Assembly (NCBI GenBank): GCA_012026655.1
Contig: JAAILG010001132.1
Coordinates: 1 to 64,000 of the forward strand
DNA length: 64,000 bases
Source of the DNA: Hydrolagus affinis
Taxonomy: Eukaryota
Reading direction: 5' to 3'
Positions 586 to 58,728 of the stretch are shown here, piece after piece (position 1 is the stretch's first letter; every line of letters starts with the position of its first letter). Position numbers and translations under genes: made by a program. The notes beneath the pieces were generated by a model, which saw only the letters and a program-made list of their open reading frames with translations, ran no database searches and was not told the origin of the DNA.

Positions 586-664
586 TGAGCTTTTCGGATT
601 CCGCGTTTGACCCACAAAATGGATAAGTCAATTCGCTTTGCAGTATATCCCACGAAGGTCTTTG

Positions 665-731: not shown

Positions 732-2100
732 GCGCATCTCGAACACGTGATAAGGCGCTATATCAAATGCAAGGATTATTATATTCACATTTCCGTAAAG
801 GTCGTGGTTTGAAATGGGAGAGGACCAGTGAACCCATCTAACTCCCCAGAAAGTTTGTTTGGCACATCTCTTCTTATCACCTAATAACCGCAAATCCTTT
901 TAATATTCACACGGTTCACATAGAAATAAGTTGATTCTTGTCGACAGCTCTTGCCAATGTGCGGCTGGGAGAAGTGTGGAAGGTTGATAGTCAAAGCACG
1001 GCAGGGTTTGTCTTAATCTGAACTTCTCTTTCCACTAAGAAGAACATCTTTCTCAACGGGAGCTTATGGAGGAAAGTTACTAGACCTTGCCCCTGGTTTC
1101 TGCTGCTCAATCACACTGGGCTGTTGACTCGCTTTTTCCCCCAGTTTAACGAGGTGGTAGCTGAGGCAAGCCACAGCTCCTTTTGAACAGGGGAAGAAAT
1201 CGAGTCAGTTCTTGGGAACAACATTGATGCTTTATCAGCAAGACAGTTTCCTTCATTTACTTTTTCACCGTTTTCTCTCAAAACTGGCTTAAATAATAGT
1301 ATAATGTTTTTAGAATGCGCGTTAGAAATTCCTGCTAACCCTAGGATGGACTGTTTGTAAACGATTCTCGATGATTTCTGATCAGCATTTGGAGTAACAA
1401 CAACAACAACAATAACAAAATTACACTTCTAGAGTAATATCATTAAAGCACGTAAACAAGAAGGATGGAGTTGGACGTATTTGGCAACGTATCACGTAAT
1501 TACCGAACCTCTGAATAGTATGAAGTGTTAATTGTAATTTGGTTTCTGACTCAGGAGCGTTTAATCATACTGTCTTTATAATGCTGGATTAGGAAGACTG
1601 GACCCTTCCCTCTCTGGTATGTTAGTGAAACGCTTAGTCAGGCAGAAAGTAGTTTGTGTACAGCAGACTTCATTTCCTCCCTTAGATCGGTATACACTGG
1701 AGTACAAGGGGTTGGCACTGTACTCCAAAAGACAAAACCACCCCTAATATTTCAAATAAACATTATTTGAAGCCTTGCTGTATTCTAAGTTTGTACATTG
1801 CGTCTTCTGTAATGCAGAATTGAAGTGATTGGTAAGTAAGGTCAGAATGTTCAGTAAACACTGCGAGCGAACAGAGACCTTGAGAGAGAGGAGGTCTGAA
1901 GGAAAGCTATAAATCATTAAATGTTTGCAACACGGACACTTTTTTAAAAAAAAAACTATAAAAGCCAATTAATTGGTGTTCGAAGTTGCTAGAGTGATGA
2001 CTTTGGTTTTTCGTATTGCTGAATGAAACACAGTTCGCCAGATCACTGAATGTGCCATATTCTTTCCCCTCAACAGAGTCCAGAGTGACACAAGTTTACA

Positions 2101-2190
2101 ATGAAGCATCTGTCCATTTCCAAGTGGCTGGGCCAGCTGGGTCTTCCTGAATACTCCGAACTCTTTCATGAAGTGTTTGATGGAGTGGAG
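2101..2190 (+). CDS. BCAR3: BCAR3 long isoform coding exon 1: N-terminal half of a SAM domain (MKHLSISKWLGQLGLPEYSELFHEVFDGVE)
   Basis: Acceptor tctttcccctcaacag before 2077, in-frame TGA at 2086-2088, acaATG with A at -3 at 2101, and donor GAG|gtgagt at 2190/2191 (phase 0). The W-L-x-x-L-G-L-x-x-Y-x-x-x-F pattern is the SAM helix 1-2 signature. Confidence 0.85.
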
Positions 2191-3896
2191 GTGAGTAATC
2201 CTGAGTGAAGACATGTTTCCCAGTTAACCCCCAATTTGATAAGAGTATTACGTAAAATAATAGGTATTAGTAATAGCCAAAAAGGTATTTGAATGACTAT
2301 TAAAATGACAAGGTCTAGTTTACAGTACTGTATTTCATATTAGAGTTACTTAATTTTTTAACTTATAATTTTACTTAACTGCGCTTCAGACATCTTACCT
2401 CCTCCCCCCCACTCTCTTTAGTTTCCAGCAGAGTCATGATTTCTTGGCTGAGGCATTGGAAGGCTGACAAGATCCAAAGTGTAAAGATTATTATCCATTG
2501 AGCTATATCCCAGCATTAGTCACCGCATTGGAGACAGACAGGGGAAGAAGCAGACAGTACTACTGTATTTACACAGTGGGTTAATTGTTCTTATTCTGTC
2601 TGATTGCGTTCTAAAACTGTTCTTGTTGTGTGTATATAATTCTATTTGCAACGCTTGCCATCTGGATTGAATGTATGTAACAGGAATCCAATGGAATTGG
2701 CATTGAAAGGAGGAATTTTCATTTTTTTTATTTCAGAGATGGCAGATAGGCCCTGATTGCTGGCAATGAACAGCTGATCTCACATTGATAATAACACAAT
2801 ACAAACCGCAGCTCAAAATACACCTTATCTGAAATTCCACCCACTCAGCCATCAAACACTAATGTCGGGTAATAGGGTCAAGCTGTGCTCCAAGTTCAGA
2901 AGCTGTGACTCTGCGTAAATGTTTTCAGAATAAGTAAAAGAAACAATCCGTTTAAATCCGTTTAAAGCAGGGTTTATTCATAACAGCACATCATTTTAAA
3001 GCTCTGAAGTGATTGCTTGTTATTTAAAGTAGCGTATGTTTTCAGGTTCAGTTGGTACAGTTCTTGAGTTTTTATCTGTTACCACTGTGGGAAGATGCAA
3101 CAAATTATCTATAATACTAGAAACTTTGATCAGGACAAACACACCATACTAATGATCACAGTTCCTCTCAATCCGCTGGAACTATTCTCAATGTATGACT
3201 TGCTTAAATTAGAGGGAGAGAATAACTACTTTTAAAATAGATACAATTCCTGGTGGGATTTGCTGAACCACACACATTTGGCCAAGGATGACACTGCAAT
3301 ACAGAGACACTTTTATTCAGCCTCCTCCAGCACTCGCTATAGCAAAGTCTGGTCCTATGAAACGTGGGTTTCACATTCAATGTGCATGGGTGGTTTTTTT
3401 TCTTACAACATAATGCATTTGAGTGTGAAAAATGATCTGTAGGTGGGCCCTTAAAATGCTGGGTATTTTTTATTATATAGTAATTGAAACCAAACACAAT
3501 TGTGAAGTTCAGTGCTCTCACCTTGTTTAAACCATAGCCCGCCATGCGTTGGCGCATAGGTTTGCAATGTGTTTAACAGGATTACCATACCTGGCAGCAG
3601 AGGCGTAGCTTTCAATCATCAGCTGCCAGTTTGGATGGGTACCAGATGACCTCTAACGCATCCTTGCATTTCAGTATGACATCTTATCACATCAGAAGGA
3701 TGTCTCAAAGCTTTGGGACGTCCTCCTGACGTGAAAGGCGCTATCCAAGTGTAATTTTGTTGTGGTTGTTGTTGTTGTTGATGATGAACAGCCATGAAGC
3801 AAATGGCCAATTTTATTTGGGGGAGTTGTTGGCTAAGACACTGGGATAAACTCCCTTCTCTTTTCAAATACTATTGTTGGATTTTTAATCTCCACA

Positions 3897-4219
3897 GTGA
3901 GTCATGTAGTATAGTGATTAGAGCGATCACCTCGCAAGAGAGAGGACCTGGGCAATTCCTGAGCATGGCAAAACCTTAGGCAAGTTTTCTTACTCCACAT
4001 GTCTCTGTTTACCTGGCAATATGTAGAAACAGGGGGGTAATAATCCCTCCAAAAAAAATGTGGTCACTCAATCCACGACTGTTTGTGGGGAAACTGCTGT
4101 GCACAATTGGCTGCCGCATTTCACAGTCATTTTGCCTTACAATGCATTCTGTGAAGCGCATTGGGAGACATGATATGGCATTGTATCAACTGCAAGAATT
4201 ATTATTAGTATTATTATTA
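3897..4219 (+). mobile_element. tRNA-derived SINE, diverged copy with a longer central segment
   Basis: tRNA-like head, central ccttaggcaagt...ctctgtttacct...aaacaggggggtaataat, then ctgtttgtggg..ctgctgtgcacaattggctgccgcattt, an L2-like tail and (ATT)n. Boundaries are approximate. Confidence 0.8.
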
Positions 4220-4644
4220 ATAACAGGCAGGACCTCGGTTTAACATCTCATCCGAAGGACAGATGTTCTTCACATGCTCCGTTAAGAACCCATAGCAGCA
4301 ACAGCAACAACAAAATTACATTTGTATGTGCCTGTCACGTTGGGAAATGTTTTCTCCACAAGGCAAGGTAACTTTTCAAATGCGTGTCTCAAAGATGCTG
4401 ATGCTGGTTTCCTCACTGCTTGTTCACCTTCCGGTCAGAATTGCTCTGATTGATCTTTATAGTTGTTCTAAAAATATTCTAACCTTTGCAAATGTGGCAC
4501 AATGATATGTCATGTCCTTTGCTTGTACATAACTTGGTGGAGATTTAAAGCGAAATGGTCTGTAGCTGTAACAATCACAGCATCAAAGGATCGACTGAGT
4601 TCTATGCTTTCTGAGGAGACATTATAATAACAACAACAATGACT

Positions 4645-4920
4645 TAATAATAATAATCCTTGCATTTGAAATATTTCCACGTCTTCTAGAAGTCTGACAG
4701 CGCTTCACAGAATATACTCTAAAGTGAATTTGTGGGCGAAACATGGCAGACAATTGCGCACAGCAGTGTCCCACAAACAGTCGTGGATTTTTTTTTCAAG
4801 GGATTATTATTAGGCGTATGGAGGAAAGAAACTTGCCCAAGGTTTCACCCCGCTTGGAATTGAACCCGGGTCTCTCGCTTGTAAGGCGAGTACTCTAACC
4901 ACTGAGCTGCAGGACTCCAC
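4645..4920 (-). mobile_element. tRNA-derived SINE, near full length
   Basis: The reverse complement begins gtggagtcctgcagctcagtggttagagt (A box), has ggttcaattcc (B box) and ends atcaaatgcaaggattattattatt-like. Confidence 0.85.
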
Positions 4921-5986
4921 AACTTGCATTTATATGGCCTACTCCACGGTGCGATAATCCTCACATTTGACACAGAGCCTTTGACGCGAGGAAGCAGTCT
5001 CGAAATGGTTTCACAGGATTTACCGTAAAGGGTGGTGACTGTGTATTTAGTAGGCGAATCACTACTGTATAAAATCCATCCAGATACATACGTGTGTATA
5101 GATTTTGAACTGTGCCGTCAAAATTTTGTGAATCAGAGTGGCGGCTGTACAGAGGGGATCACTCAAATATCTGTGTGACCTCCTGAGTGTGGATCATTGT
5201 GCTGCAGGAATCGTACCCTAAAACCCAGTGTTAGTGTGACTCCTGCCAGCGTTAGCTGCCATCATTCTCTACGCTCAGACAGCCATTGAGAGAGGCTCTT
5301 TTGTCTGTGTACTAAGTGAGGCATGAGCTCATTTTCAAGCCTATTGCTCGGTAACTCCATTTAAGGAGATGAGATCTGACACTGGTCCCATATATACATT
5401 CAATCAGCACGTAAACCACTGAACAGCAAATCCTGACCGGAATAACAAGCAGGGCAGATATCTCTTTGTAACTGTGACTAACATTGAGAGCACAAGATTG
5501 TCCCGCACGCCTCATAACTTTTGAACACAGGATGGGGTTTCCTTACTCTTGTAGCGCGCATGTTGTGGTGGAAAGTGCGACAGTTACTACACTGACGCCC
5601 CGGGTTCATTCGCTGCAACAAAATGCAAGAGTGGGTTGGAATTATACCCACATTTGACTTCTGAAAATATGTTTCATATGCCACAAATATGCTGCGGTAA
5701 AAGGTGATTACAATTCTTGACTCAGGGTTCACTGAGTGTTTGTTGTTGGTTTGCAAACAAAAAAAATAGCCGCCTCGATTAACAAAAGCTAACCAGCTCA
5801 GCTCCTAAATGAGCCTGTTGCATCAGGCAATGAATCCAGCAGACATGGGGCTGCGTGGAAGGTCTCACTCAAGGCACATGTCAGCACTAGTATTACTGCT
5901 ATCTCCTTCTGTCAATGACTTGCCGTCTGTGAGTAGAGATTTTAGGTTTGACATAAAGCCACTCAGCAACTTTCAGCTGAAACAGC

Positions 5987-6017
<31 letters not shown>

Positions 6018-6713
6018 GTGCGCGCAGTTCAAATAATATGTAAGCAGTAGGGTTTTCTTGCCTCTGGAATAGAAGGTTCGAGCCTCGTGTACGGACTTGA
6101 GCTCATCGTCTCCAGGCTGACACTCCAGTGAATTGCCAGGGTAGAGCGGGTTATGGTATTTCAGTGCTATGAGATTGCGATAAACATCCAACTTTGGTCC
6201 AGTGGCAATGTCCAGCTCACGAGCAACGCACGCGGTGGTGGTGGTGGTGGTGGGGGGTTGGGGGGGCGGCGCTAAAAGAAGTGTACAGGACAAGAAAGTG
6301 GTAACAAGTAAAAGCTAGTCACCTCAAACAGAGCACCTGGCTTTTAGAGCTGTGGTGTTTGGTCAAAGGTCACTGCATTTCTGATCGCATGGAAAGTTCT
6401 GAAGAATTGACTTATAATATTATTTATTATTATTATTATTTCTGCTGAAGGTAATGACTTTACAACGCTGCAAACACTTAGCAAGACTGCCTTTGAAAAC
6501 GTGCGGGTGACAAGCAAGAGAGGTTCCGATACTGTGAGGCCAGTGGAAAATTACTGATGGAAATATCTTTTGATCAGCCAAATTGTGTGTGTGTGTGTGT
6601 GTGCATGAGGAAAGTGATGGATTGTGGATGAGGGGAGTATGTGTATGTTTACCAATGCCTCATGTTCACCAGGGGGGTTAATGCAATCAGGTGCAGGACT
6701 TCTGAGCTGATCA

Positions 6714-6714
<1 letters not shown>

Positions 6715-6749
<35 letters not shown>
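6715..6749. repeat. (CA)n microsatellite
   Basis: Direct reading. Further (TG)n tracts lie at about 5987-6020 and 6584-6603. Confidence 0.95.
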
Positions 6750-6750
<1 letters not shown>

Positions 6751-7909
6751 CTTTATTATACGAAAACACCTGCATAGAAAAACATTGTCAAAACACAAGC
6801 TATCAGAGCAGCAGAGACTTTTGCAAATAATGGAAAAGTGTTTGAACAGCCATAACATTTGCCGTAAGATAAGAAAGACAAAGAGCTACCAGGATACAGC
6901 TAGGATCCTAAAAGAAATGATTCCGTCCCATTCATCTTAACATAAAGTAACAATGATTAAATCACTCGGCCTCCTTTTGTTCTCTGTTCACTTACAACAA
7001 ATACGAAGCTGAACAAAGGGCTGGCCATCTGATCCCGGAGAGAGTTTACATGAGGAGCTGGGCTGTCACAGTCCAGTTGAAAATCACAGGTTACACAGTA
7101 ACTTTACTCAAATCGATGCTGGCTGGACTCAATTATTGGAGAAACACCGAAGAGCTTTAAGTATAAAACTCCTTTAAGATCAAATGATTGAATGTGAAAC
7201 TGTTTCCATGATGAGTTAGACTAAGGTCTCCGGTGGATTTAACTCCAAATAACAGAACTTGTGATGAGGGTGTTCGTTCTGTAAATTTTAAATATGTTTA
7301 AAAGCCGATTGCAGAGTTTATTGGAATGCAATTTCCTTCCTCCGCGTGCCTTGTTTCATTTCCATGCATTAGTACATTGGAAATTTACAGCTTTAACTCC
7401 AGATAAAAGAACTTCTGTGGAGGGTGCCCTGTAAAATGTGATGAGAAAAACTCATTATAACATAACTTCTTTCCGCCGAGGGCCCTTTTTCTCACTTTCA
7501 TGTGTCAGGGCTGCAGAACGATTGAGGATTTACAGGAACAATATGTGATGATTACACAGGAAGCCCAAGCATGTTTTAGCAGAATACGGATTGCTGTTCC
7601 GATTGTAAATGAATCAAAGTGATCTAATTCTCCACAAGTTTATTGTGGGAGCAAGATTAGTAGTTATGTGTCCAATTTGGCAGGGTGTGGTGATAGCCTG
7701 AGAAAATACAGCAATTACTAAATCTACCATAGAATTAATTCAACATTTCAACCTAATGCCATTTAAAAAGAGATGAAACCCAGTATTCCTTTCACCTTTG
7801 CAAGTCCTGATCAATGCATTTGTTGCGCAGGTTTCTGGTTATTCAGCTGGGTAACAGTTAAGATAGAAGGATATATACTGACTGACTGACTGTTGATGTT
7901 CTTGTGTAG

Positions 7910-8024
7910 GACTTACTCCATTTGAGAGAGGCTGATCTAATGCAGATGGGAATTAAGGACAGGATGCACAGAAATCTCATCGCATCCAACATCCTTCTGC
8001 TTCAGGAGAGAGAGAGACGAAAAG
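7910..8024 (+). CDS. BCAR3: BCAR3 long isoform coding exon 2: C-terminal half of the SAM domain (DLLHLREADLMQMGIKDRMHRNLIASNILLLQERERRK)
   Basis: Acceptor gttcttgtgtag (phase 0, matching exon 1) and donor AAAG|gtactt (phase 1, matching the exon at 14302). The LL.L.E.DL..MGI....HR..I...I..L pattern is SAM helices 3-5. Confidence 0.85.
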
Positions 8025-11000
8025 GTACTTCCAACAAAAGTGATCCAGCTTTATTTAGTTTTTTTTTCACTGGGGTGGAAACATTATCATTAACAAAAAA
8101 ACTTTGCTTTCTCCCTCCCTCTCTCTCTCTCTTTCCCTTCCCCCACTCTGGCTGAAAATTAATCCGAATTTACTCATTCAACTTTCTTTCTATCGGTGAA
8201 TATCATCAGACAATAATAGTAATGCTTGCTTTTGATATAATGCCTTGTCACGTCTTCGAGGCGTCTCAAAGCGCTTCCAGGTTTCAAGTCCATGTTGATT
8301 TGGAGCATATTTTTTTCTCAAGTTTGCTTTGATGATAGCCCAGTTAGAGTTAAAGTCTGGCATGAAAACCGTAACTTTTGAACTTGATTGGGTCAGAATC
8401 AATTAGTGCATCCAGTCAATAGCATTTCAATGACTGTTGTTTTGGACAAAGATTTTTGGGGGGGTGGGTTAGGGATGAGAGAGGTGCATTCCCAAAAACG
8501 TTTTGAGTGATTAACTGGACATAATAATAATCCTTGCATTTGATATAGTGTTTTATCACGGCTTTGAGATATTTCGAAGGGCTTGACAGGATATATAGTA
8601 CTGTTAAGTGAATTGACTGTACATGTATGTTGCGGGTGAAATTCATATGTCACATCACTCAATTGCATTTCTCACCCCTGTGTTACACTCGCTGAATTTC
8701 TGTTTGCTTACAGCTCTTGTGTGTGTGAGAGAAAGGACGGACAGAGGAAAAGTCAGGTGCTCGAATTAACATGCTTGTTCAGTTTGCGTGACAAAGCATT
8801 TTTTATTGCCTTCTGGCCCGGCGATCAACAGTTTGAGACTATGCTGCCTCAACATCATTGGGCTTTGCTGAAAAATATTTTGAGGTTATAAAAAGATGGC
8901 ACTATTAAGGATCAATTAGCTGAAATCAATCTGACTCTGTTCTGTCTGATGGCGAATATAACTAGCATTCATATGTGCACAATAGCCTACAGTGAAGCAG
9001 CCACTAGAATTTGGACAAAAGAAGATTGCGGTGGCATTCACAACAGATGCTATTTTATGAGCCCAGAGCTGAACATGTTGTTCTGTGCTGTTTGTGGTAG
9101 CTCTCGTTTAGTTGCCCAGTGGTTTGGGTCCATAAATTCAGACCCCACTTACGACGCCCCACTTATAAAAATGGCCAACGGACGGCATTTTTCTTTGGTA
9201 AACGTGTGCACATGGTTTACGTGCATAATTTGCACGCGCGCGAACTTCCAAATGGCCTGGTGTATTCCCTCGCTCTTGCCATCGGGGTGCATTTGTACTT
9301 TTAAGCGTCCGTACAACTTCTGGCGTGCTGAGAATACAGGCATTTAAAGATGTAATTCTGTTCTCCATCTCCAGTCACTCCGATCGGATGCATATTTGGT
9401 GCATAAGCAATGTTAGGGAGTTCCTCATTGTCCGGCTCCACTGTTTAATGCGACACGTGATAAACTCGCTGTAACAATGGAATGCTAATATGATACAGCC
9501 TCAAAAGCGCATCATTCAAGGGATCAGTAATTTAATCTGGGAAGAATTTGTGATTTTGTTCAATGGCAAAGTACAGTGAGCACAAAGTACTCCCAGCATT
9601 GATTTCTAACACTGCCCAGAAGGCACCTTAAATGATTTGCTGGAGTTTCGAACAAATTCTTAACCTAATCTCAGTTTACCTTTCAGGTTCTGAATCTAGT
9701 AAATCGTTGAGTCCAGTGTATATGGTGATCATTTGAAAACAGCATAAAATGCTTTGCTAGGTCTCTGCAAAGGAAGTTTACACGTATCATACATGATACA
9801 TTAGCAGAACTGAAAACAACCCTGTACAAACAACAGATTCTGAAAAACAAGCGGGTTTTGGCGTCCGCATTCCACGCAGAATTGCATTGATCCACGTCCC
9901 ACAAAAGCAAACAGAATTGTGTCTGTGTGTCGGCGAGTGGAGTGGCACACTAATGCATTTAATGGTTATTGGTCAAATGTGAAGTTCAGACTGGATGGCC
10001 AAAACAGGGGTGTGGCTGAGTTGCTGTGGATTGTCAGTGCAATGTGTAACTCAGCGAGTGGGGAGTGCTGCTCTGGAAAGTGATTAGCAGCACTTGTTGA
10101 GGCTGCAAGTGTGGGAAAGGGGTGGGGAACACAAAAAAAAAGTGAAACTTCATAAATAACTATCTGGTGCTTTGATGTGCAACTTGGCAGACAGACAGCC
10201 TTAGGCCCAGAGTATGTGAGCGTGCTTTGCATATTCAGCGTAGTTGGTGAAGGACAGTGCGATCAGTGTTTGGAGACGCCTTTTTTTAAAAAAAACTCTT
10301 ATTTATTAGAGGTAGGTAGACACTACTCTCCAAGTTTCCTCTGTGTGTGCTTTCTCCAGTATTTCTGCCTACGAAGAATCCACCTGCTTCTCTTTCAGTG
10401 ACTACTCTATTTAAGAAATTTTGTTACAGTTGATGGCTGGTGAGAGAAGATGTATTCATTCTTACTGTTTTCAGGCACAAGTGTTTTCATTTCAAGTTCA
10501 ATGTATTCTCTTTTGTTCCTCCTTGTTGGGTTTTAAATGCAAAGCCTTATCTGCAATTGAAATGGCACATGTTTCACACAAGCAGCACATCAGCCCCAGA
10601 AAGTATGTTCTTGTTTCTTTTGAATATGTGGGAGAATGAAATGTTCGAAACTAACATTGCTCTATCTGATAGAATTTTTTGTAAAAAAAACATAAGCCAC
10701 TCTATGGAAGATACGTGCCTTTGAAACTGGTGGAAATAAAGGATTCATCTTAATCTCTTGATTCCCAGTTTCTGTCATTTTATGAATGTTCAGCTGTGCA
10801 AACGGGAGTCGAAAGATTTGTTTTGGGGGAGCAAACATGTACAAGTTTTAACTCCAGTCAGTTTAGAACGGATACTTTCACCAGCATCTTTGTTTGATAA
10901 TTGCAATTGTCTGTTTCTTTGTAGTCATTGCTACATTCTGTTAGCTTGGCCTGGCTGTAATCTCTCTTGTGTGCTCAATTCATGGCCAACACAATACTGT

Positions 11001-12111
11001 GAGGATTGAAATCACCGTGAGCCAAGCAACCCTCTGCTTTGTGTCAACTTTTGTATAAAAATAATTATTTTTAAAACAAACTTTTCCCTAATACTTTTCT
11101 CTTATGGAAAATCTCTGTGAGGGTAGTAGACAGTTCCTGTAGATGGTGCAGAAGTACCCGTATTATGTTTTAGTGGTTGTGGGATTAAAATTTAAAAAAA
11201 TACTCCTTAATCACTCGACATCTTCGGAAACCTTGTGAAAAGAACTGATTTAAAAATAAAAGCGTTTGGGATGGCAAAGGTTGCGAGACATTTCAGTATG
11301 AAAGGCAGCAGTGTAGGATGCAGCGGGACACTATAGGAAACATTGTTCTTTTCAGTATTGTCCCACTCAGAATGAATTGCTTTTTTGTTAGGGTTCTTTG
11401 TGTGGGCTGCAGCGCCTGAGAATCTGAAGTTTGTCTTGAACTCACAAGATGGTGGGAATTTCTCCCCCAGTTTTATTACGTATCTGAGATTCTGTTTTTC
11501 TCTTTTAAAAAAAGATTTTTTGGGTGGATTCAGCACATTTCCCCCGGTTAAATAGCAAGTGTTTGATTTATTCAGGACGTTGCTTGCGTCTGTACTCATC
11601 GGCTGGAAATGACTTCTGTTGTGGATCAAAGCATTAGGCGGGTGATTTAAGCCACAGGTCAGTAACGTTGAAATATTTCCCTTGCACTAGGATTGGAAAG
11701 GTGTTGTTAGGAAAAAAAAAGCAAGCAATGCACTTTGAAGTGACTGTCTCTAAAATATCTTACATTAGGAACAAGTTTTTTTTGCTGTGAGGCTGTTCCA
11801 AAAGAAGTCTGTGTTTGGTGCAGGAAGCCTTTCAACTTGGATTAAAAGATGGCGAGAGATTAAAAAGAAGCCACGCTGAAATCTGCATTAGCTCATGTCA
11901 GCAAAGTGTTGAGTCTGATGGCCTTAAGACTGACAGTATTCTCTCATACTCTTACCCCTACCTCCACTAACTGGACAACATAGGCACTGGAGAAAGGGAC
12001 AAAGGATACAGATGGCAAGATACGCTTAACAGTTTTATATTGTCAGATGGACAATATTTAAATGAGTTCTTTTTAATCGTTGGTTTAAATTCCCCAGTGA
12101 GTGAGAACCAA

Positions 12112-12360
12112 CAACGAGAACAACAATATTACATTTATAGAGCGCCTTTCACGTCGGGAGGACATCCCAAGGCGCTGAATCCCGAGCACAGGGGACGGGC
12201 AGGGTAGGGGGAAGGGAGAGAGGTGGGAGAGCAGCAGAAGGCACGAAAAAGAGGTTCTTGAGACCGGCCTTGAAGGAGGCAAGGGAGGAAATGAGGCGAA
12301 GGGAGTGTGGGGTGGAGTTCCAGAGTGTGAGGGTAGAGAGGCTGAAAGCCCGGCCACGGA
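12112..12360 (-). mobile_element. L2 LINE 3' end (ORF2 terminus, 3'UTR, tail)
   Basis: The reverse complement has ccttcaaggccggtctcaagaacctc (F.A.LK.. end of the RT ORF), a C-rich UTR, and cagcgccttgggatgtcctcccgacgtgaaaggcgctctataaatgtaatattgttg. Confidence 0.8.
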
Positions 12361-12459
12361 TGCTTCATAACAATAATAACTTTATCATCTATGTTCCTTT
12401 GCTTGTTGTGTGGTGGTGGGGGGTGGGGTGGAGGGGGGGGGTAGTTTTGCTCTTGTTTG

Positions 12460-12700
12460 CTGGCCTCTTCCCCTGGAGGCATTGACTCACGTTGGGTATA
12501 TTTCTCCAGGAACTAGTTGTCCCTGATACCTGGTCCAAATGGCCATTCCTCAAGTGTGAACCTTGGCAATGAATGCTGTGCGATCGCAAGCCAATTGATT
12601 CTGTCCTGAATTAACATCCGAGCAAGTGCAGCAGTAAGCACTGGATACTAATTAGCAGCGACTGCAATGCCCAGTGGTGCTGATGTCAATTGAGGCACTG
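12460..12700 (-). mobile_element. Ancient SINE relic, AmnSINE2-like
   Basis: Colinear degenerate blocks match my recollection of the AmnSINE2-type consensus in reverse: atacctggtccaaatggccattcctcaagtgtgaacc, gattctgtcctg, cagcagtaagcactggatac, gcccagtggtgctgatgtcaattg. It shares blocks with 41690-41990. Confidence 0.5.
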
Positions 12701-14301
12701 TTTGCAATACTACTCTGGAATCCATCCAGCTGTGGATCAAGTTGGCGGAACCTTTTTGATTATTACGGGTTCATCTCTGCACTGGGTAGTTACCTTTGTC
12801 AACCTGGCAGTGGGAGAGGCACATCTTGTCTTGACGACAAGATAAGGGACTTTATCAAACGCTAGGATTATTATCACAGTTTACGTCAACGAAATCTGGA
12901 ATAACTGTAACGCAATACAAGGCTGAGATTTTCGTTTGGGGGGGGCACACAATTTAATCAGTGTTGTATTTGACCTGACGTGTGAATCAACACCAAACAA
13001 ACAAGATATTTTTGTCAACAGTTGAAGTCTTTAAGTATGTAAACGCGGATAGTGAATATGTCTCAGACAGAATATCACAGCATCACAAGAGAAGTCTGGA
13101 TGAAGAAGCTCACTGCATCCCATTTGATCTCTTTCATCTCGCAAAATAACAACCAGACTTTAATGCTTTCCCATTGAAGCATCAAGTTCTTAACCTAAAT
13201 GAGTCCAGTGTCCTATTCCAGCTGATGAATAGTCACTGCAAAAATAAATACTTCCTTCTGTCTTAAAACCAGCCCTTCACAAGCGAGAATAATAATAATA
13301 ATCCTTGCATTTGATGTAGTGCTTTTCACGTCTTCTAGCCATCTCAAAGAACCTGTGATGTCTTGTCCTTCTACCTTGGTGCTAATAATCTTCCCAGTTA
13401 AAATATGTATATTAGGGTTACTCTCATCCTGTCAATGTTAGAATTGCAATGAAAAGTTTAGCTTCCTGGTTTTGCTCTGGTTGGACAGACACAACTGGTG
13501 GCGCTCAGTCAATAACATTTTAAATACATCGGGCGCTGTGTTTTAGACTGACAGAACCATCTAGGCTTCAAATACTGGCAGCTGGCAAGAGTATAGATCT
13601 GACTCAAAATGAACATGTCTAATCAAATACTCCCTGGCAGAGCGGAGAGGCACAGAAGCTCCAGATATTGGACCAAACATTCAGAGAATAATGTTAGCTT
13701 TTTTTTGGCTGATTTTACATTAACTGTAGAGATGTCTAGCGACCCCTGCGTATATTGCAATGCCCTTACATTAAATGAATGTACCCTAACCTGTGCCTTC
13801 GTTTAGATTTAAATAACTACAATGACAAATCCCAACCTTTGACCCTTCTCGGTACACAAAACAAAACCAAGGTTTCGAGGTCCACATCAAGGTTTCTGTT
13901 GTTTAACCCTTTCCCTCCCACGCAACTTAAAAAAAAAAAGATGTTTGAATCCAGCAACCGAGCACATAAAGAAGCTTTGTATTGTGACCTGACCAGAAAG
14001 ACCAAGGCCATCGGACGTGAATGGAGCTAAGGGATGACAGGCAGCCTGGCTAGAGGCTGGTGTCAGTTGGGTTTTACAGAATCCCCTGGACGTTTGAAGA
14101 TTGTGCTGTCGAGCGAGCGGTTGCTCATTGCTGTGAACTATCGTGTGGATGAATGGATTCTGATTAACATGCAGCATGCAGTTTTAAAAGTGAGGGGGGA
14201 GGCCCTTTTGTGCAATGATTAATTGGCCTTTAAATTCTTATTTGAGTCCTTTTTCTCTCTTCCCCCCCCCCTCCCCACCCCCCACCCACCCTTGTGCATA
14301 G

Positions 14302-14635
14302 AGTTAAGGATGATGGCAGCGGGGAAGTATGCCAGCCTTCCTCGGAATATCCACATCAGTCACCAGTGCTCGCTGGCCTCCGCCATGGACCTGCACAACA
14401 GCGGCACCCCTCCTGTCAAACAGCGCTCCAGCTCCTTCCAGAGCATCTCCATCCACGGCACCCTCCCCAGGAAGAAAAATGGGAAGATCCCCCTCGTGTC
14501 ACGCGACATGTACAGTCCCCGAGGCCCCCAGGCCCAGCTCCCGCCCCAGTCTCGCTTGCGGAACGCCTCGGTGTCCCACGACATCATTGAAGAGCACCCA
14601 ATGCCACAAGGAAAGAGAGAAGACTTCCCTACCAG
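14302..14635 (+). CDS. BCAR3: BCAR3 exon with the canonical start (ELRMMAAGKYASLPRN...SIHGTLPRKK...EDFPTR)
   Basis: Matches the human BCAR3 N-terminus MAAGKFASLPR and SIHGTLPRKK. Acceptor gtgcatag follows a long pyrimidine tract; donor CAG|gtaagg (phase 2). Confidence 0.95.
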
Positions 14636-20547: not shown

Positions 20548-20587
20548 GAACAAGCACATAATGGACTTTGCCCTGGAATATGTTAAG
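20548..20587 (+). CDS. BCAR3: BCAR3 40-nt exon (R-NKHIMDFALEYVK)
   Basis: Acceptor ttcttctccacag and donor AAG|gtaaga; phases 2 to 0 fit both neighbours. Matches human ...DPTVEYVK. Confidence 0.92.
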
Positions 20588-37567: not shown

Positions 37568-37696
37568 TTTTCAAAGGACAGGTACATCATGGATTCAACG
37601 CCAGAGAAGCTGAAGAAAGAATTGGAGGAAGAGTTAAAGTCCAGCGGTGATGAGCCGCCGAGCCACGCCTGGTATCACGGACGAATCCCTGGACAG
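37568..37696 (+). CDS. BCAR3: BCAR3 exon (FSKDRYIMDSTPEKLKKELEEEL...SHAWYHGRIPGQ), start of SH2
   Basis: Acceptor ccttctttag and donor CAG|gtaggc; 129 nt, phase 0/0. Near-identical to human FSKERHIMDRTPEKLKKELEEEL. Confidence 0.97.
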
Positions 37697-38628: not shown

Positions 38629-39077
38629 GTGGCAGAGAACCTTATCCAGAGAGATGGAGACTTCCTGATCCGCGACTCTTTCTCCAGCCCTGGAAACTTT
38701 GTGCTGACTTGCCAGTGGAAAAACATTCCTCACCATTTTAAAATCAACAAAGTCATCGTCAGACTGAACGAAGGTTACTCCCGAGTGCAATATCAGTTTG
38801 AGCGAGAGAGCTTTGACACTATCCCAGCGCTAGTGCGTAGCTACGTGGGGAATCGCAGAGCCCTGACGGAGCACACCGGAGCCATCATTTTTCAGCCCAT
38901 CAACCGGACTTTTCCACTGAGATGCATTGAGGAGAAACATGGAATGTCTGCTTGCGTCAGGCAGCATCAGCAAGTCTATTCATCAGAGGGAAAGCCGGAC
39001 ACGACCAAGAGACTGAGCTTGAACATGTCAAACCAGCCATCCCAGGAACGCAGTTTAGCAACTGGAAGTCTCTTAAG
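38629..39077 (+). CDS. BCAR3: BCAR3 SH2 domain exon (VAENLIQRDGDFLIRDS...GSLLR)
   Basis: GDFLIRDS phosphotyrosine-pocket motif, GNFVLTCQWKN and GAIIFQPINRT. Acceptor tttctag, donor AAG|gtaggt (phase 2). Confidence 0.98.
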
Positions 39078-39885
39078 GTAGGTTTCTCATAAGAAATAGT
39101 TCAACCAGCACAATAGATCACAGACAACATTCCATTTTAAAGGTACTTTTTTTTGACAGCAGCTTGAGGTACAGTAAAAAAAAACACTAGTTTGCCTGTA
39201 GCTTTCAAATAAAAAAACCCTGAGCCATTCGCATATTTACAGCCTCACAGCTGTTGTGGGCTGGGAACGGGTAAACTCAAAACCATTATTAATATGCTTT
39301 TTGATAGGTTCGGAGTGTGTTCCACTCTCTTTCCAGCATCTGCCAAGATTAGAGTACTTACTGTATACTATTTAGACAGTAAAACTGTGCTCTAACCCTT
39401 TAAAGCTGCCTTCTCATGTACTTGTGGCTAATTTGGCTTTGCCCTCTAAATGGCTCCAAAACCTAGCTGACGTAATGAACTCTAACCAGTTAAAAGGAAG
39501 CCACACATTGTTAATTATTGATTCCGAGCTTTTTTCCAGCTTTGCTGCATATCCATACGACCTTCGACTTTTAAGGATTAATGGTCTTGTAGTAGTTTTC
39601 AAGTGAGGTTACGGTGGCAGGTTAAATTGATTTTGTTTTTTCTACAGCCATGTTTATTTTCCATGTCATTTAAAATCCTTCCTCCGAATTCCTCAAGCCC
39701 CATCACCACTAGTCAGTGGATTTGTGTTTTAATACCCAGATTGAATGATTCAACTGCTTACATTGTAACAGCGAGGGCTGGGCAAGAACTATTTTACCAG
39801 AAGTGCTTTAAAACCAGGTTTTAAAGCACTTCTGAAGGCAAAAACCATCAAGCGTTTGAATCTTTCGTCATTACTGTTACTGTAG

Positions 39886-39986
39886 AAATAAAGACAAGAG
39901 TGGCAGCCAACCTGCGAGCCTCGACTATGTTCCAGATAAACGACGACCTTTGAAATCGCATCAGTCTGAAAGTTACCTTCCTCTGG
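39886..39986 (+). CDS. BCAR3: BCAR3 exon (R-NKDKSGSQPASLDYVPDKRRPLKSHQSESYLPL-G), absent from the ORF track
   Basis: Acceptor tactgtag and donor TGG|gtgagt; phases 2 to 1. Matches human NKEKSGSQPACLD...HQSESYLPIG. Confidence 0.95.
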
Positions 39987-40394
39987 GTGAGTGTTGCATT
40001 AGTCATAGCTTAGTTGGCACGTTCTATGTGAGATGTAAAGAACTTTTCAAAGGGTTTATTGAAGAGATGTATCGAGTTTAGATATTACGTTCAAATTTTA
40101 TTATGGAGCACTTACTAAAATTTCTTGCTGGAAACTTTAATGTAGGAATTTTTTAACTTAAAAAAAAGTCGAATTTTTTTTGGAACTTCCCTTTTGAAAC
40201 TCCACACTCCCTCCCTCCCTCCCTCCCTCCCTCCCTCCCACTCTAATAATCTTGAAGTTCTGAGTTTCATATTACATCTCCACGATTGATCTAAAACCAA
40301 AAGACTTAATACAGTACTTAACAAATGACTTGACTGAAGTTTTTTTTTATTGAATGATATCCTCTATCACTTACTTGTCTGGCATTATTCACAG

Positions 40395-41074
40395 GGTCAA
40401 AAGCTCAGCACCAGCATCAGCAGCCACCAAAGCAACAGCAAAAGCCAAGCATGGAAGGAAATGCTCACACCAAATCAACAGTGTTCAGGACCGGCAGCGA
40501 GCCCACGCTTAGCCCAACAATTGTCCGAAGGCTCACTTTGGAAACACAGGCTGGGGAAGCACTTAGAGGTTCTGACAGCCAACTCTGCCCTAAGCCACCA
40601 CCGAAACCCAGCAAAGTACCCTCTTTGAGAATGCCACACTCGCCTCTGTTAGTCAACGATCCCCAGAGAGACAATTGCTGTGAACCAGTGCCTAACACTC
40701 CCATGGATGGGCCAAAGACAGCCCAGGATTTTGGCCAACACAACGGTTATGTACAAAGACTAAAAACTGAAGAGCCAGTAAAACCCCTCTTTCAAAAATC
40801 AGACTCTATCCTCAGCATGTCTGACGGGAGCTCGCCCCAGTCCACGATTCCTGCTGAGGATGAAAACCGGGAGGAGGAGGAGAAGGAAGTTATTGTGTTC
40901 CTCAGACCAGTGTTGGAAACGGTTTCCTGTTTTAAACCTAATGACTTTAACTCAAAGATGCTTCCTCCTGACAACAAGCCCCTGGAAACATCAGTGATCA
41001 AGCACGTCAAAGAACTGTTTGCCAACGTTGACCCCAAAACTATTGCAAAGCACATCCTTAAAGTGGATAGCCAG
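40395..41074 (+). CDS. BCAR3: BCAR3 Pro/Ser-rich linker and start of the Cdc25-like domain
   Basis: VFRTGSEPTLSP, GEALRGSDSQLCPKPPPKP and PPDNKPLET. Acceptor attcacag (phase 1), donor CAG|gtacga (phase 0). Confidence 0.97.
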
Positions 41075-41689
41075 GTACGAACTGTTTGATCGAATTAGTT
41101 GTCTTCTGGTACTACACCTTGCTCAAGGGGCATTTAAAAATATATATATATATTGGATGGTGAGCATCAGCAGGCCTTGGAAGCATCTCTTTGACACAGA
41201 TCCATAAGGTCCTGTCTTACTCTAGAATTAACGTAACGATAAGATTATTTCAAGCACATTACAATCTTGTCCAGCAGCTACTATTGAATGCAGAGCCTTA
41301 TGCTGTTACAGTATTACTGTAGTCACAAATAAAATAAAGGCTTACATTTACCCATATATCATGCCTTTTTTTTGTAAAAAAAATGGTCTTGAACAAGATG
41401 AATTAGAAGTGAATGTTCTACAGGCAAGTATAGGTTTGTAGCGTGGATTAGAGCAAAAGATCCTGAGTGTAGCTAGACCCACTGAAACAATTGTTGGTAC
41501 AGTACTCCTACTCTGTGCAGTCGCGTATCGGTAAGTGTGCTCACCTCACAAGCGAGAGGACCCAGGTTCTTCAACAAGAATCAAGAAACTCGAGCCAATT
41601 TTTCTTCTGATATTCTCCTCTCATTCTTTACTAAAAGGCACTTGATTTATTTTTGCTATCGGGATACAATTCCCTTGGTTAATGGGTTG

Positions 41690-42232: not shown

Positions 42233-43140
42233 GTAAACAGTATGATTGCACTGTTTATACAGTAAACTATAACAGCATTCGGTTTCCTAAAGGCTGCAAC
42301 GAAAAGATACACCAACATAGCAAACAGATTCCAGTGCGCAATAATTAGAAATCGCCTGAGCAGCTGATTAAAGTTAGACAAAATGCTTCTTGCTCTACAC
42401 CAAAGCCGGCGGATACCTCGGGCAAACCATTGTACAGCTCAGAGCTCTGTCAGAACAGACAATCAATGGCAAGTTGTGCAAAGGGAGGGCGATACAGAGA
42501 TGCTGTCGTTGTGGACAATGTTGATTAGCCAGTGATTAGTAAGGATGAGCGCTGCCTCTTTTACAATAATAATCCTTGCATTTGATATAGCGCTTTTCAC
42601 GTCTTCTAGACGTCACAAAGCACTTCACAGAATACACTGTAAAGTAAATTGATTGTACAGAATGTATATATGTGGGCGATTTTTACTGAGTTGACTTTTA
42701 CTGAGTGAATTTAGGGGTGTCTGGTTCGGGTCAAATTAAAACTGTAATTGAGATGCTGGAAGATAACATTTAATAACAATAAGAAGAAGAATAATCCACG
42801 CATTTGATATAGCGCTTTTCACACCTTCTAGACATCTTGACGCGCTTCACAGAATATACTGTGAAGTGAATTGACTGTATATTTGTGGGCGAAACGCAGC
42901 AGCACAGTAGTGCCCCCACAAACAGTTGTGGAATGAAATGTCCAATTTTATTATTGTGGTTTGTTTTCGAGGGATTTAAAAGGATGATGGCCAGCTATGA
43001 ACCTATATGTTAAATCGAAGGCAGATTTTGCTTCAGGAATGGCCACACGTGAGACCACATTCAGTCAAAGCCTAGGGCTTGCAAATTTCATGGGAGGTTT
43101 TTTTTTGTTAAAAAAAAGAAATTTTCCTGCATTTTCTCAG

Positions 43141-43312
43141 GCACAATACGCTGGCTATTGCGATTGCAGTGGATATCCTCGGCTGCACAGGAAGTTTAGC
43201 AGAAAGAGCTGAAGTGTTAAACAAGTTCATCCAACTCGCACTGGAACTGAAAAATTCCATGGGAGATCTGTACGCCTTCTCGGCTGTAATGAAAGCCTTA
43301 GACATGCCACAG
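43141..43312 (+). CDS. BCAR3: BCAR3 exon (HNTLAIAIAVDILGCTG...SMGDLYAFSAVMKALDMPQ)
   Basis: Acceptor attttctcag and donor CAG|gtaata; phases 2 to 0. Confidence 0.97.
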
Positions 43313-43379
43313 GTAATATTACTTTACTTTTACCGTATACAGTAAAACTGGATCGAGTCTCATCTTTATGAATCATATA

Positions 43380-43696
43380 TAATAATAATACTTGCATTTG
43401 ATAGAGCGCTTTTCACGCCTTCTAGACATCTCAAAGCACTTCACAGAATGTACTGTAAAGTGAATTGACTGTATATTTGTGGGCAAAATGTGGCAACCAA
43501 CTGCGCACAGCAGTGTTCCCCCAAACAGTCGTGGATTGAAATGGCAAATTGTACTACAGTATTGGTGTGTTTTTTTGGATGGATTATTATTAGGCGTGTA
43601 GAGTAAGGAAACTTACCCAAGGTTTCGCCCTGACCTGCCTGGATTCGAACACAAGTCTGACGCTTGTAGTGCTTTAACCACTGAGCTACAGGACTT
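43380..43696 (-). mobile_element. tRNA-derived SINE, full length
   Basis: A and B boxes and the shared tail. Truncated copies also lie at about 42562-42680, 42780-42975 and 45145-45290. Confidence 0.9.
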
Positions 43697-44247
43697 CGAG
43701 TCCTATAATCACCAAAGTCGTATATTCAGAATTAGTCCTAGTAGTTTATTAAAGTTAGTTGAAATGCTTCTTCCTCTACATTGAACCCAGTCAATTTTAG
43801 CTTTCATACCGAGGTAGGTGAAACCATTATGAGGCTCAGAGCTCCATCAGATCAAACTGTCAACAGGATATTTGTAAATCGGATGAATGCATGATTGAAA
43901 CTAGCCACAGCAATAGAGTGAACCAGTAACGTGTTGTCATTTTACAGTGTTAGTAAATCAGAGCCCTCGCATTCAGTGTAATCATGGTTTCTCATGTGAA
44001 AACAGGCATTTCCTGTGATTCACTACGTTGCTTGCAGAATATTACAACAGTAGGGTGATCCATATGAGAGAATTATTAATTATTCTATTATATCTGCTAA
44101 GCAAAGTGATCTTAAGAAATGAATATTTAAATAAAAGAGCAGGAACATTGAGTCTAATACTTCTCAACAAGTGCCTGTACCCTCGGCTGAGTATTATTAC
44201 AATGGGGATCTTTTCATTGCCTATCTTCACTTCTTGTTGCCCACCAG

Positions 44248-44359
44248 GTTGCACGTTTAGAACAAACCTGGACCACACTGAGGCACAAATACACCCAAAA
44301 CGCTATCCTCTATGAGAAGACTCTCAAACCATTCATAAAAGCTCTAAACGAGGGAAAAG
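44248..44359 (+). CDS. BCAR3: BCAR3 exon (VARLEQTWTTLRHKYTQNAILYEKTLKPFIKALNEGK)
   Basis: Acceptor cccaccag and donor AAG|gtgggt; phases 0 to 1. Confidence 0.97.
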
Positions 44360-44803
44360 GTGGGTATTTTGCAACATATGTCTGCTGCATATATTTGTGA
44401 TGGCTCATGATGAAACTGGCTTGAGCGGTGTTGACTCAAGGTCATGTCTCAGAGGTGTGAACAGAACGCACTCAGACTGCTGTCAGGTTAAATTCCTGCC
44501 TTTAGATTGGTTCAATGGAAGTTTCACCTTCCACACAACCCTCCCCTGCATAACTCTAGCACACATTTTATGGTCAGGCTTTTAAAATTAGTGTTAGTCT
44601 CGCTCAAAATACATATCAGTATTGCACTGCCTGATTTTCCAATCAACAAAAAAAAAGCTCAATGAATGGTTGCACAAGTTACTGAATAAACGAATGTGAG
44701 GAAAACATTGCGAGTTTTTTTGCTTTAAAAATGCTTTGTGTGTGATAATGTAGGATGCTGCGGTCGATATTTCAAGACTTGACACTTCTCTTTATGCTTC
44801 CAG

Positions 44804-45010
44804 AGGAAATTCCACTCAGCAACACAACAGTCCCGCTTATCCTGCCCCTAATCACCCTGATGGAACGTCAGACTGTCAACTCCGAAAACGTCGAATTGTG
44901 GGAAAATAATGATCAGAGCTGCGAAATAATGCTCAAACATCTGGAGAATGCTCGCTCCATCACACAGAATGCTGCTATACACAAAGCCAACACGGAAAAG
45001 ATTCTGGAAG
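44804..45010 (+). CDS. BCAR3: BCAR3 exon (EEIPLSNTTVPLILPLITLMERQ...CEIMLKHLENAR...EKILE)
   Basis: Acceptor gcttccag and donor AAG|gtaagc. Keeps the HL..AR helix used by NSP proteins to bind Cas proteins. Confidence 0.97.
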
Positions 45011-58721: not shown

Positions 58722-58728
58722 TTATTAC

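What the first reader, a model, noticed from the sequence alone, without database searches (positions are those of the whole stretch)
2101..14635. Hidden SAM domain fused in frame to BCAR3: a SAM-SH2-Cdc25-like adaptor
Seen: two short exons 5.7 kb apart (2101-2190 and 7910-8024) have canonical splice sites and matching phases (0/0, then 1/1 into 14302). Spliced, they read MKHLSISKWLGQLGLPEYSELFHEVFDGVE|DLLHLREADLMQMGIKDRMHRNLIASNILLLQERERRK-E|LRMMAAGKYASLPR. This is a full five-helix SAM pattern placed about 70 aa before the methionine that starts human BCAR3. An in-frame TGA at 2086 fixes the start. Known: mammalian NSP proteins (BCAR3, SH2D3C, SH2D3A) are described as SH2 plus Cdc25-like only. 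Inference: the SAM is ancestral and was lost or made non-coding in some lineages. It may already exist in automated gene models, but I know of no functional description.
Basis: partly seen in the sequence, partly recalled or inferred. Interest (0 to 1): 0.85.

Follow-up and report, generated by a model that had tools for sequence, protein, structure and literature searches.

The report
Conserved SAM domain heading fish BCAR3
Two small exons upstream of this animal's BCAR3 signalling-adaptor gene encode a genuine, strongly conserved SAM protein-binding domain that splices in frame onto BCAR3; published accounts of the mammalian protein do not mention such a domain, though it already sits unremarked in automated gene models.

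Summary
Exons 2101-2190 and 7910-8024 have the stated splice sites, phases and upstream stop. Each matches a complementary half of Pfam SAM_1. The same two exons, with the same edges, occur in 23 database proteins from sharks, a sturgeon, teleosts, sea turtles and alligator. Intact orthologues score 45-55 bits on SAM_1 against a cut-off of 23. One orthologue folds as a five-helix SAM.

Three of these are RefSeq models, two of them named BCAR3. The rest of the window's gene (SH2, Cdc25-like domain) is collinear, in frame, and closer to BCAR3 than to SH2D3C.

Not shown: no RNA data could be obtained. No model longer than 314 aa carries the SAM, so a complete SAM-SH2-GEF chain is inferred, not seen. 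Loss in mammals was not tested.

Three paper searches found no description of a SAM in BCAR3 or its family. The scan noted this stretch once before, on the same DNA (s1-906698). Verdict: a real, ancestral, undescribed domain of a known adaptor, of moderate interest.

The parts
2077..2100 (+). Non-coding start of exon 1, after a likely acceptor (AG at 2075-2076). Holds the in-frame TGA at 2086-2088.
   Evidence: Sequence reading only; the acceptor is inferred and no upstream exon was seen in the window.
2101..2190 (+). Coding exon 1: start codon and SAM helices 1-2 (30 codons, phase 0/0). Donor GTGAGT at 2191.
   Evidence: SAM_1 positions 6-26, 17.6 bits; 63-77% identity to 10 orthologues. Helix assignment by alignment to the model.
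7910..8024 (+). Coding exon 2: SAM helices 3-5 (38 codons plus 1 nt, phase 0 to 1). AG at 7908-7909, GT at 8025.
   Evidence: SAM_1 positions 34-60, 19.6 bits; 5 hits among 1.84 billion representatives; 46-68% identity to 11 orthologues (the lowest HSP, to the turtle protein, runs past the exon into intron sequence).
14302..14635 (+). Coding exon 3: the BCAR3 N-terminal region. Two in-frame Met codons at 14310 and 14313 could start a SAM-less form. Phase 1 in, phase 2 out.
   Evidence: 44-55% identity to 8 orthologues that carry SAM plus this exon.
20548..20587 (+). Coding exon 4 (40 nt). AG at 20546-20547, GT at 20588.
   Evidence: (HSPs of P0004 and P0013).
37568..37696 (+). Coding exon 5: linker and first part of the SH2 domain (43 codons). 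It follows a 17-kb intron that holds the N run 31826-31925.
38629..39077 (+). Coding exon 6: main part of the SH2 domain.
   Evidence: Pfam SH2, 40.7 bits, cut-off 21; for the edges.
39860..41086 (+). Middle, proline/serine-rich BCAR3 exons inside open stretches 39860-40078 and 40358-41086. Exact edges not mapped.
   Evidence: Translations only; assignment by recalled similarity to BCAR3.
43112..45856 (+). Cdc25-like (RasGEF-fold) C-terminal exons inside open stretches 43112-43342, 44191-44397, 44749-45051 and 45581-45853. The stop follows 45853. Exact edges not mapped.
   Evidence: RasGEF 22.2 bits on one exon, cut-off 23.1. BCAR3 chain 3t6a at E 5.9e-24 and 3.1e-21.

Best explanation
Exons 2101-2190 and 7910-8024 are the first two coding exons of this genome's BCAR3 gene. 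Together they encode a five-helix SAM (sterile alpha motif) domain. Transcripts that start upstream of 2077 splice exon 1 to 2 to 3. Translation then starts at 2101 and runs in frame through the SAM into the usual BCAR3 N-terminal region, and most likely on into the SH2 and Cdc25-like (p130Cas-binding) domains. The product would be a SAM-SH2-Cdc25-like adaptor about 72 residues longer at its N-terminus than the form that starts at the Met codons in exon 3.

The domain is ancestral for jawed-vertebrate BCAR3 and is kept by selection.

As in other SAM adaptors, it most likely adds a protein-protein docking or self-association surface to the Cas/BCAR3 complex. Its most conserved surface is the acidic helix 2-3 loop and the start of helix 4.

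Shown: the exons, phases, SAM identity, conservation, and the SAM-to-exon-3 junction in other species' models. Inferred: continuity to the SH2 and GEF domains in one protein, and the binding role.
For: - Exon anatomy. All six mapped exons are in one continuous frame.
- By my count from those calls, the SH2 tryptophan falls at residue 228. That is 156 counted from the second Met of exon 3. A 2024 review (PMC11083344, passages read) puts the human SH2 domain at codons 154-253.
- SAM identity: complementary half-hits in the window. Five of five orthologues tested score 44.9-55.5 bits on SAM_1 against a cut-off of 23.
- Fold: the AlphaFold model of the turtle orthologue has five helices, with pLDDT 86-95 over residues 11-70. 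All listed Foldseek matches are SAM domains, with target TM-score up to 0.88 and probability 1.00.
- Conservation: shark versus bony-fish identity averages 65% in the SAM and 42% in the adjacent accepted coding exon 3. The SAM is higher in 15 of 15 pairs. Reptile versus fish or shark SAM identity is 53-76%.
- Start: the 'MKH' start is kept in all 13 rows of alignment A1 that have a true exon 1.
- Junction: 9 of 23 database models read SAM, then (E/D)L(K/R)M, then the BCAR3 exon. They include RefSeq XP_038649354.1, XP_035377850.1 and XP_035377851.1.
- Orthology: the Cdc25-like exons are closer to BCAR3 than to SH2D3C.
Against: - No RNA evidence. The one run found (X1) is genomic DNA: it has even depth across the introns. 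Of 884 joints, the 15 listed all lie in a repeat at 3739-4648; 869 were not shown.
- None of the 23 SAM-bearing database proteins exceeds 314 aa or carries SH2 or RasGEF in the precomputed Pfam columns.
- The three RefSeq models (Electrophorus X1 and X2, S. canicula) leave exon 3 for non-conserved tails instead of the SH2 exons.
- The turtle and alligator models join the SAM to unrelated tails, not to exon 3.
- My searches could not see proteins above 550 aa. The unrestricted search used only a 38-aa query, so full-length SAM-bearing models may exist unseen.
- The sturgeon record is flagged UNVERIFIED_CONTAM by NCBI.
- dN/dS was not computed, because no orthologous DNA could be fetched.
Confidence: 0.7

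Rival explanations
1. The SAM exons mainly serve short products. Transcripts from the upstream promoter give a 200-250 aa protein (SAM plus the disordered BCAR3 N-terminal region, or SAM alone in reptiles) and end before the SH2 exons. Full-length BCAR3 would then come from another first exon and start at the Met codons in exon 3.
For: All 23 SAM-bearing models are 57-314 aa. The three RefSeq models, from 2 of 2 RefSeq species seen, end after exon 3 with other 3' exons. Turtle and alligator models have several different tails after the SAM. Exon 3 has two Met codons at 14310 and 14313 that could start a SAM-less form.
Against: - The tails after exon 3 or exon 4 are not conserved between species, while the SAM and exons 3-4 are.
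- Four ab initio models (P0004, P0009, P0010, P0013) stop right after exon 4. In the window exon 4 precedes a 17-kb intron, so this looks like gene splitting by predictors.
- The length limits of the searches hid anything above 550 aa.
Confidence: 0.2
2. The SAM exons belong to a separate small upstream gene, and gene predictors chained them onto BCAR3 exon 3 by mistake.
For: Many records are named only 'SAM domain-containing protein' or 'uncharacterized LOC'. Reptile models do not use exon 3.
Against: - Exon 2 ends in phase 1 and exon 3 opens in phase 1 in the window. The same junction residue pattern recurs in 9 models from 8 species across sharks, sturgeon and teleosts, made by different pipelines.
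- No conserved alternative last exon for a stand-alone SAM gene was seen.
- Exon 3 has its own acceptor and needs an upstream partner.
Confidence: 0.07
3. Chance open frames or decayed pseudo-exons with no function.
For: Each window exon alone is below Pfam's cut-off. There is no expression evidence.
Against: The SAM keeps 53-76% protein identity between reptiles, bony fish and sharks. It also keeps the start codon, exon edges and open frame, and it is better conserved than the neighbouring accepted coding exon in 15 of 15 pairs.
Confidence: 0.01

Closest known systems
BCAR3 / AND-34 / NSP2 as described for mammals (NSP family: BCAR3, SH2D3C/SHEP1, SH2D3A)
   Same: The window's gene has the family's SH2 domain and Cdc25-like C-terminal domain in the same order and spacing. 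The SH2 domain starts about 156 residues after the exon-3 Met, against codon 154 in the human protein.
   Different: It has two extra 5' coding exons that put a SAM domain about 72 residues ahead of that Met. The 2024 review (PMC11083344, passages read) gives only SH2 plus GEF-like domains. It also says human translation starts in exon 6 after five untranslated exons.
Automated gene models: XP_035377850.1 and XP_035377851.1 (BCAR3 isoforms X1/X2, Electrophorus electricus), KAA0714218.1 (BCAR3, Triplophysa tibetana), XP_038649354.1 (LOC119964121, Scyliorhinus canicula), GCB65317.1 (S. torazame)
   Same: Same exon 1 | exon 2 | exon 3 chain, with 63-77%, 50-68% and 44-55% identity to the window's three exons. 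Pfam SAM_1 and SAM_2 are precomputed on them.
   Different: All are truncated (199-314 aa) and lack the SH2 and GEF parts. None comes with a functional description.
SAM domains of Eph-receptor effectors and scaffold proteins: SHIP2/INPPL1, ANKS1A/B (Odin, AIDA-1), SAMD5, Caskin-1/2
   Same: These are the nearest solved sequences. For the shark orthologue SHIP2 SAM (5zrx) ranks first at E 1.2e-5. For the turtle orthologue Caskin-2 ranks first at E 1.7e-7. ANKS1B, SAMD5 and Caskin-1 are also listed. Acidic residues sit in the helix 2-3 loop and at the start of helix 4, the surface that binds the Eph SAM end-helix in PMC5993539 (section 9 and passages read).
   Different: Identity is only about 22-33%. 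In the alignment the SHIP2 Phe that stacks on the Eph SAM (Phe1226; passage read; that this is the aligned Phe is my own reading, not a numbered residue in the output) faces Asp here. No binding was tested. The domain sits in an SH2/GEF adaptor, not a phosphatase or ankyrin scaffold.

Membership tests
SAM domain (Pfam PF00536 SAM_1 / PF07647 SAM_2) | Profile match above the curated cut-off | tested here: inconclusive
   Window exons were searched apart, by rule. They score 17.6 and 19.6 bits on complementary halves (model positions 6-26 and 34-60), each below the cut-off of 23. Intact orthologues pass in 5 of 5 cases at 44.9-55.5 bits. The joined window peptide was not searched.
SAM domain (Pfam PF00536 SAM_1 / PF07647 SAM_2) | Compact five-helix bundle | tested here: met
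   Tested on the turtle orthologue P0001, which is 70% and 66% identical to window exons 1 and 2 in alignment A1. The model has helices 6-12, 16-25, 29-34, 37-42 and 48-69 with pLDDT about 90. All listed Foldseek matches are SAM domains, with target TM-score 0.80-0.88 for single-domain chains. Not run on the window's own joined peptide.
NSP family, BCAR3 orthologue | SH2 domain | tested here: met
   Exon 6 scores 40.7 bits on Pfam SH2 against a cut-off of 21.
NSP family, BCAR3 orthologue | C-terminal Cdc25-like (RasGEF-fold) domain, closer to BCAR3 than to SH2D3C | tested here: met
   Two exons match BCAR3 chain 3t6a at 86.8 and 78.4 bits, against SH2D3C chain 3t6g at 61.0 and 61.3 bits. One exon scores 22.2 bits on Pfam RasGEF, just under the 23.1 cut-off. 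SH2D3A has no solved chain to compare.
NSP family, BCAR3 orthologue | Binding of p130Cas/BCAR1 by the C-terminal domain | not testable with these tools
   Needs biochemistry.
Eph-SAM-binding effector SAMs (SHIP2 / Odin / SAMD5 type) | Negatively charged residues in the helix 2-3 loop and at the start of helix 4 (PMC5993539, section 9) | tested here: met
   In alignment A1, D27, E30, D31, E37 and D39 are at least 90% conserved. They lie in the helix 2-3 loop, helix 3 and the start of helix 4 of the model. The window has all five. Presence of charge only.
Eph-SAM-binding effector SAMs (SHIP2 / Odin / SAMD5 type) | Measured binding to an Eph receptor SAM domain | not testable with these tools
   Needs ITC, pull-down or a complex structure.

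The most novel reading that the evidence does not exclude
The ancestral BCAR3 was a two-handed receptor adaptor. Its N-terminal SAM uses a conserved acidic mid-loop to dock on the basic end-helix of Eph-receptor (or related) SAM domains, while the SH2 domain binds receptor phosphotyrosines. This would couple Eph signalling to Cas. Mammals would have lost this hand, and some of the five untranslated 5' exons of human BCAR3 would be relics of the SAM exons. The same idea was raised in scan note s1-906698.
Probability: 0.15. Interest if true: 0.7.

Novelty: new variant of a known kind. Interest (0 to 1): 0.5.

Why it matters
BCAR3 and its relatives are much-studied adaptors in integrin, receptor-tyrosine-kinase and anti-oestrogen-resistance signalling. 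They are described as SH2 plus Cdc25-like proteins with a disordered N-terminus.

A SAM domain kept from sharks to alligators, and better conserved than the neighbouring N-terminal exon, points to an ancestral interaction that work on mammalian proteins cannot have seen. Candidates are self-association or docking on another SAM protein, such as an Eph receptor.

It also gives a concrete case of a coding domain that may have turned into untranslated leader exons.

Practically, it shows that many fish, shark and reptile annotations split or truncate BCAR3 at this point.

Tried and rejected
- RNA support. The look-up of sequencing runs with exon 2 gave one run, with 0.20 of 10 sampled words and no record as RNA. 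Read laying on 2080-8060 showed genomic contigs about 98% identical: 37 differences in 1659 bases for the longest piece, with the introns covered. It neither supports nor refutes splicing. Only part of its difference table was shown (40 rows; 53 hidden), so exon-versus-intron divergence could not be counted.
- Reaching full-length models. I tried to climb the length window of the search for homologous proteins, from a 255-aa query to a 314-aa query. Nothing between 315 and 550 aa carried the SAM, so the climb stopped. The third search went to reptile fragments instead.
- The unrestricted representative search used the 38-aa exon 2. It could only detect hits above about 35 bits and returned 5.
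- ESM Atlas. The SAM part gave generic SAM clusters at 0.88 or below. The SH2 exon gave generic SH2 clusters at 0.89 or below. These are leads only and showed no BCAR3 cluster.
- Papers. 'BCAR3' with 'SAM domain' gave 2 papers. 'NSP family', 'SH2D3C' and 'sterile alpha motif' gave 5. 'BCAR3' with 'sterile alpha motif' gave 7. By their listings none concerns a SAM in BCAR3; I did not open them. Two further searches turned up nothing on the point. The BCAR3 review has no occurrence of 'sterile'; its 6 word-start matches to 'sam' were not among the passages shown and I did not check them. PMC5993539 inspected 163 mouse SAM domains and does not mention BCAR3.
- Rejected: chance ORF (conservation) and SH2D3C identity.
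- Species. I take the window for a cartilaginous fish. It has repeated SINE-like units that I recall from shark genomes, and exon 3 matches best to shark models. This was not tested.
- Not done: any look at human or other mammalian DNA.

Full report
WHAT IS IN THE SEQUENCE

- Start: the ATG is at 2101. An in-frame TGA lies at 2086-2088. A likely acceptor (pyrimidine run, AG at 2075-2076) lies upstream of that stop, so the stop is inside the exon in any case.
- Exon 1 is 2101-2190: 30 codons, donor GTGAGT.
- Exon 2 is 7910-8024: preceded by AG, 38 codons plus one base, donor GT.
- Exon 3 is 14302-14635: preceded by a long pyrimidine tract and AG. Its first two bases complete a Glu codon with the last base of exon 2.

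I then followed the frame onward.

- Exon 4 is 20548-20587.
- Exon 5 is 37568-37696. It follows a 17-kb intron that contains the N run 31826-31925.
- Exon 6 is 38629-39077.
- Further open stretches up to a stop after 45853 carry the rest of the gene.

All six mapped exons keep one frame. By operator rule I searched the spliced model exon by exon and left the joined step out. The window's spliced peptide was never built or sent to a tool.

IS IT A SAM DOMAIN?

- Exon 1 alone matches Pfam SAM_1 at model positions 6-26 (17.6 bits, E 0.005). Exon 2 alone matches positions 34-60 (19.6 bits, E 0.0012). SAM_2 gives parallel hits.
- Each half is below the 23-bit cut-off, so the window's own membership is formally inconclusive. 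The halves are complementary and in the right order.
- Intact orthologues from databases pass clearly: 5 of 5 tested score 44.9-55.5 bits.
- An AlphaFold model of the turtle orthologue P0001 was built with alignment A1, which has 15 rows and holds the two window exons as separate rows. It has five helices (6-12, 16-25, 29-34, 37-42, 48-69). Block pLDDT is 86-95 over residues 11-70.
- Foldseek against the PDB lists only SAM domains: Eph receptors, Caskin, BICC1, ANKS3/6, SARM1, p63 and SAMSN1. Target TM-score reaches 0.88 and probability is 1.00. E-values are modest (2e-3 at best), as expected for a 65-residue domain.

IS IT CONSERVED, AND WHERE?

Searches:
- A search of 1.84 billion representatives with exon 2 gave 5 hits.
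- Three word-seeded searches followed, each restricted to the SAM region. Their length windows were 140-446, 173-550 and 58-185 aa.
- Two cluster look-ups added further members.

Together these gave 23 proteins carrying all or part of this SAM. Their sources are:
- Sharks: Scyliorhinus torazame, S. canicula, Chiloscyllium punctatum.
- A sturgeon: Acipenser sinensis. NCBI flags this record UNVERIFIED_CONTAM.
- Teleosts: Synaphobranchus, Gymnothorax, Albula, Megalops, Electrophorus, Triplophysa, Tetraodon.
- Sea turtles: Eretmochelys and two Lepidochelys species.
- Alligator mississippiensis.
- Three unnamed Logan assemblies.

No bird, mammal, amphibian or squamate record appeared. Given the length limits, this is not evidence of absence.

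Measures of conservation:
- tblastn of 11 of these proteins on the window hit exon 2 with all 11 and exon 1 with 10 of 11. The protein alignments always broke at residues 30|31 and 68|69.
- Identity to the window is 63-77% for exon 1, 46-68% for exon 2 and 44-55% for exon 3.
- Between sharks and bony fish, the SAM averages 65% identity and the adjacent accepted coding exon 3 averages 42%. The SAM is higher in 15 of 15 pairs.
- The start 'MKH' is present in all 13 rows of A1 that have a true exon 1.

After so long a divergence, this is only explicable by selection on the protein.

IS IT PART OF BCAR3?

- The downstream exons carry an SH2 domain (40.7 bits).
- They also carry a Cdc25-like domain. 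Two of its exons match BCAR3 chain 3t6a at 86.8 and 78.4 bits, against SH2D3C chain 3t6g at 61.0 and 61.3.
- Counting residues from the exon tables, the SH2 tryptophan is residue 228. That is residue 156 from the second Met of exon 3. The review PMC11083344 puts the human SH2 domain at codons 154-253 of an 825-aa protein whose translation starts in exon 6 after five untranslated exons (passages read).
- The gene is therefore collinear with mammalian BCAR3 from exon 3 on. That the human start Met is the homologue of the exon-3 Met is recalled, not from a call.
- Three of these nine are RefSeq models. Two of them are named 'breast cancer anti-estrogen resistance protein 3 isoform X1/X2'.

WHAT IS NOT SHOWN

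No RNA.
- The only run found holds genomic DNA of a relative about 98% identical. Depth over the introns is even.
- Of 884 joints, the 15 listed all lie in a repeat; 869 were not shown.

No protein with SAM, SH2 and GEF together.
- All 23 models are 57-314 aa.
- The three RefSeq models (S. canicula, Electrophorus X1 and X2) leave exon 3 for non-conserved tails.
- Four ab initio models stop right after exon 4. In the window that exon precedes the 17-kb intron, a likely place for predictors to split a gene.
- Turtle and alligator models join the SAM to various unrelated tails.
- Proteins above 550 aa were invisible to the word-seeded searches. The unrestricted search had a 38-aa query, so full-length SAM-bearing models may well exist unseen.

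I put about 0.7 on the full SAM-SH2-GEF protein, 0.2 on mainly short SAM-bearing products, 0.07 on a mis-merged separate gene, and about 0.01 on chance.

HOW IT MAY WORK

- The best-conserved stretch of the domain runs from the helix 2-3 loop to the start of helix 4. There D27, E30, D31, E37 and D39 are at least 90% conserved.
- H50 and R51 at the start of helix 5 are also conserved.
- The nearest solved sequences are SAM domains of SHIP2, Caskin-1/2, ANKS1B, liprins and SAMD5.
- PMC5993539 (section 9 and passages read) shows that SHIP2, Odin and SAMD5 bind the basic end-helix of Eph-receptor SAM domains. They do so through negatively charged residues in exactly this loop and helix-4 start.
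- The alignment of the shark orthologue to SHIP2 SAM keeps several of these acidic positions. It does not keep the SHIP2 Phe used for stacking.

A docking role on a basic SAM surface is therefore plausible but untested. The partner could be an Eph receptor, another SAM protein, or BCAR3's own helix 5, which would give head-to-tail self-association. That the NSP relative SHEP1 couples Eph receptors to small GTPases is known to me only from a title in a reference list and from recall. Scan note s1-906698 proposed the Eph idea first. I reuse it as the boldest reading at about 0.15.

NOVELTY

The domain is present in automated models and in UniProt 'SAM domain-containing protein' entries, so the raw fact is not new to databases.

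Three full-text searches found no paper whose listing concerns a SAM domain in BCAR3 or the NSP family. The passages I read of the 2024 BCAR3 review list only SH2 and GEF-like domains. Supplementary files, which I could not open, might hold domain tables.

I class it as a new variant of a known kind: a known adaptor with an extra, known domain that appears ancestral and lineage-restricted.

Noticed in passing
window 3680-5080: High-copy repeat inside intron 1. In run X1 the summed contig depth rises from about 60-120 to between 1e5 and 3e6, with hundreds of joints and loose ends. Probably nested transposable elements.
   Followed up: no
window about 660-780, 12141-12200, 25526-25600, 45084-45140, 63100-63160: At least five copies of a SINE-like unit. 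Its translation repeats a '(S/R/N)(A/V)FH(V/I)GRTSQ' motif. I recall similar units from shark genomes, which suggests a cartilaginous fish. Not tested.
   Followed up: no
window 31826-31925: A 100-base N run inside the 17-kb intron 4 of BCAR3.
   Followed up: no
window 1-620: G-rich stretch with GC skew +0.20 over the first 2 kb. It has long stop-free frames of Gly/Arg-rich translation. It may be the end of a repeat or of a minus-strand element that runs off the window.
   Followed up: no
window 46000-64000: Downstream of the BCAR3 stop, GC falls to 0.34-0.38. No conserved open frame stood out in the plus-strand scan. The minus strand was not examined.
   Followed up: no
database proteins P0004, P0009, P0010, P0013: Four ab initio models from different projects all truncate BCAR3 right after the small exon 4 and read into the intron. 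This looks like a systematic annotation split at the long intron before the SH2 exons.
   Followed up: partly
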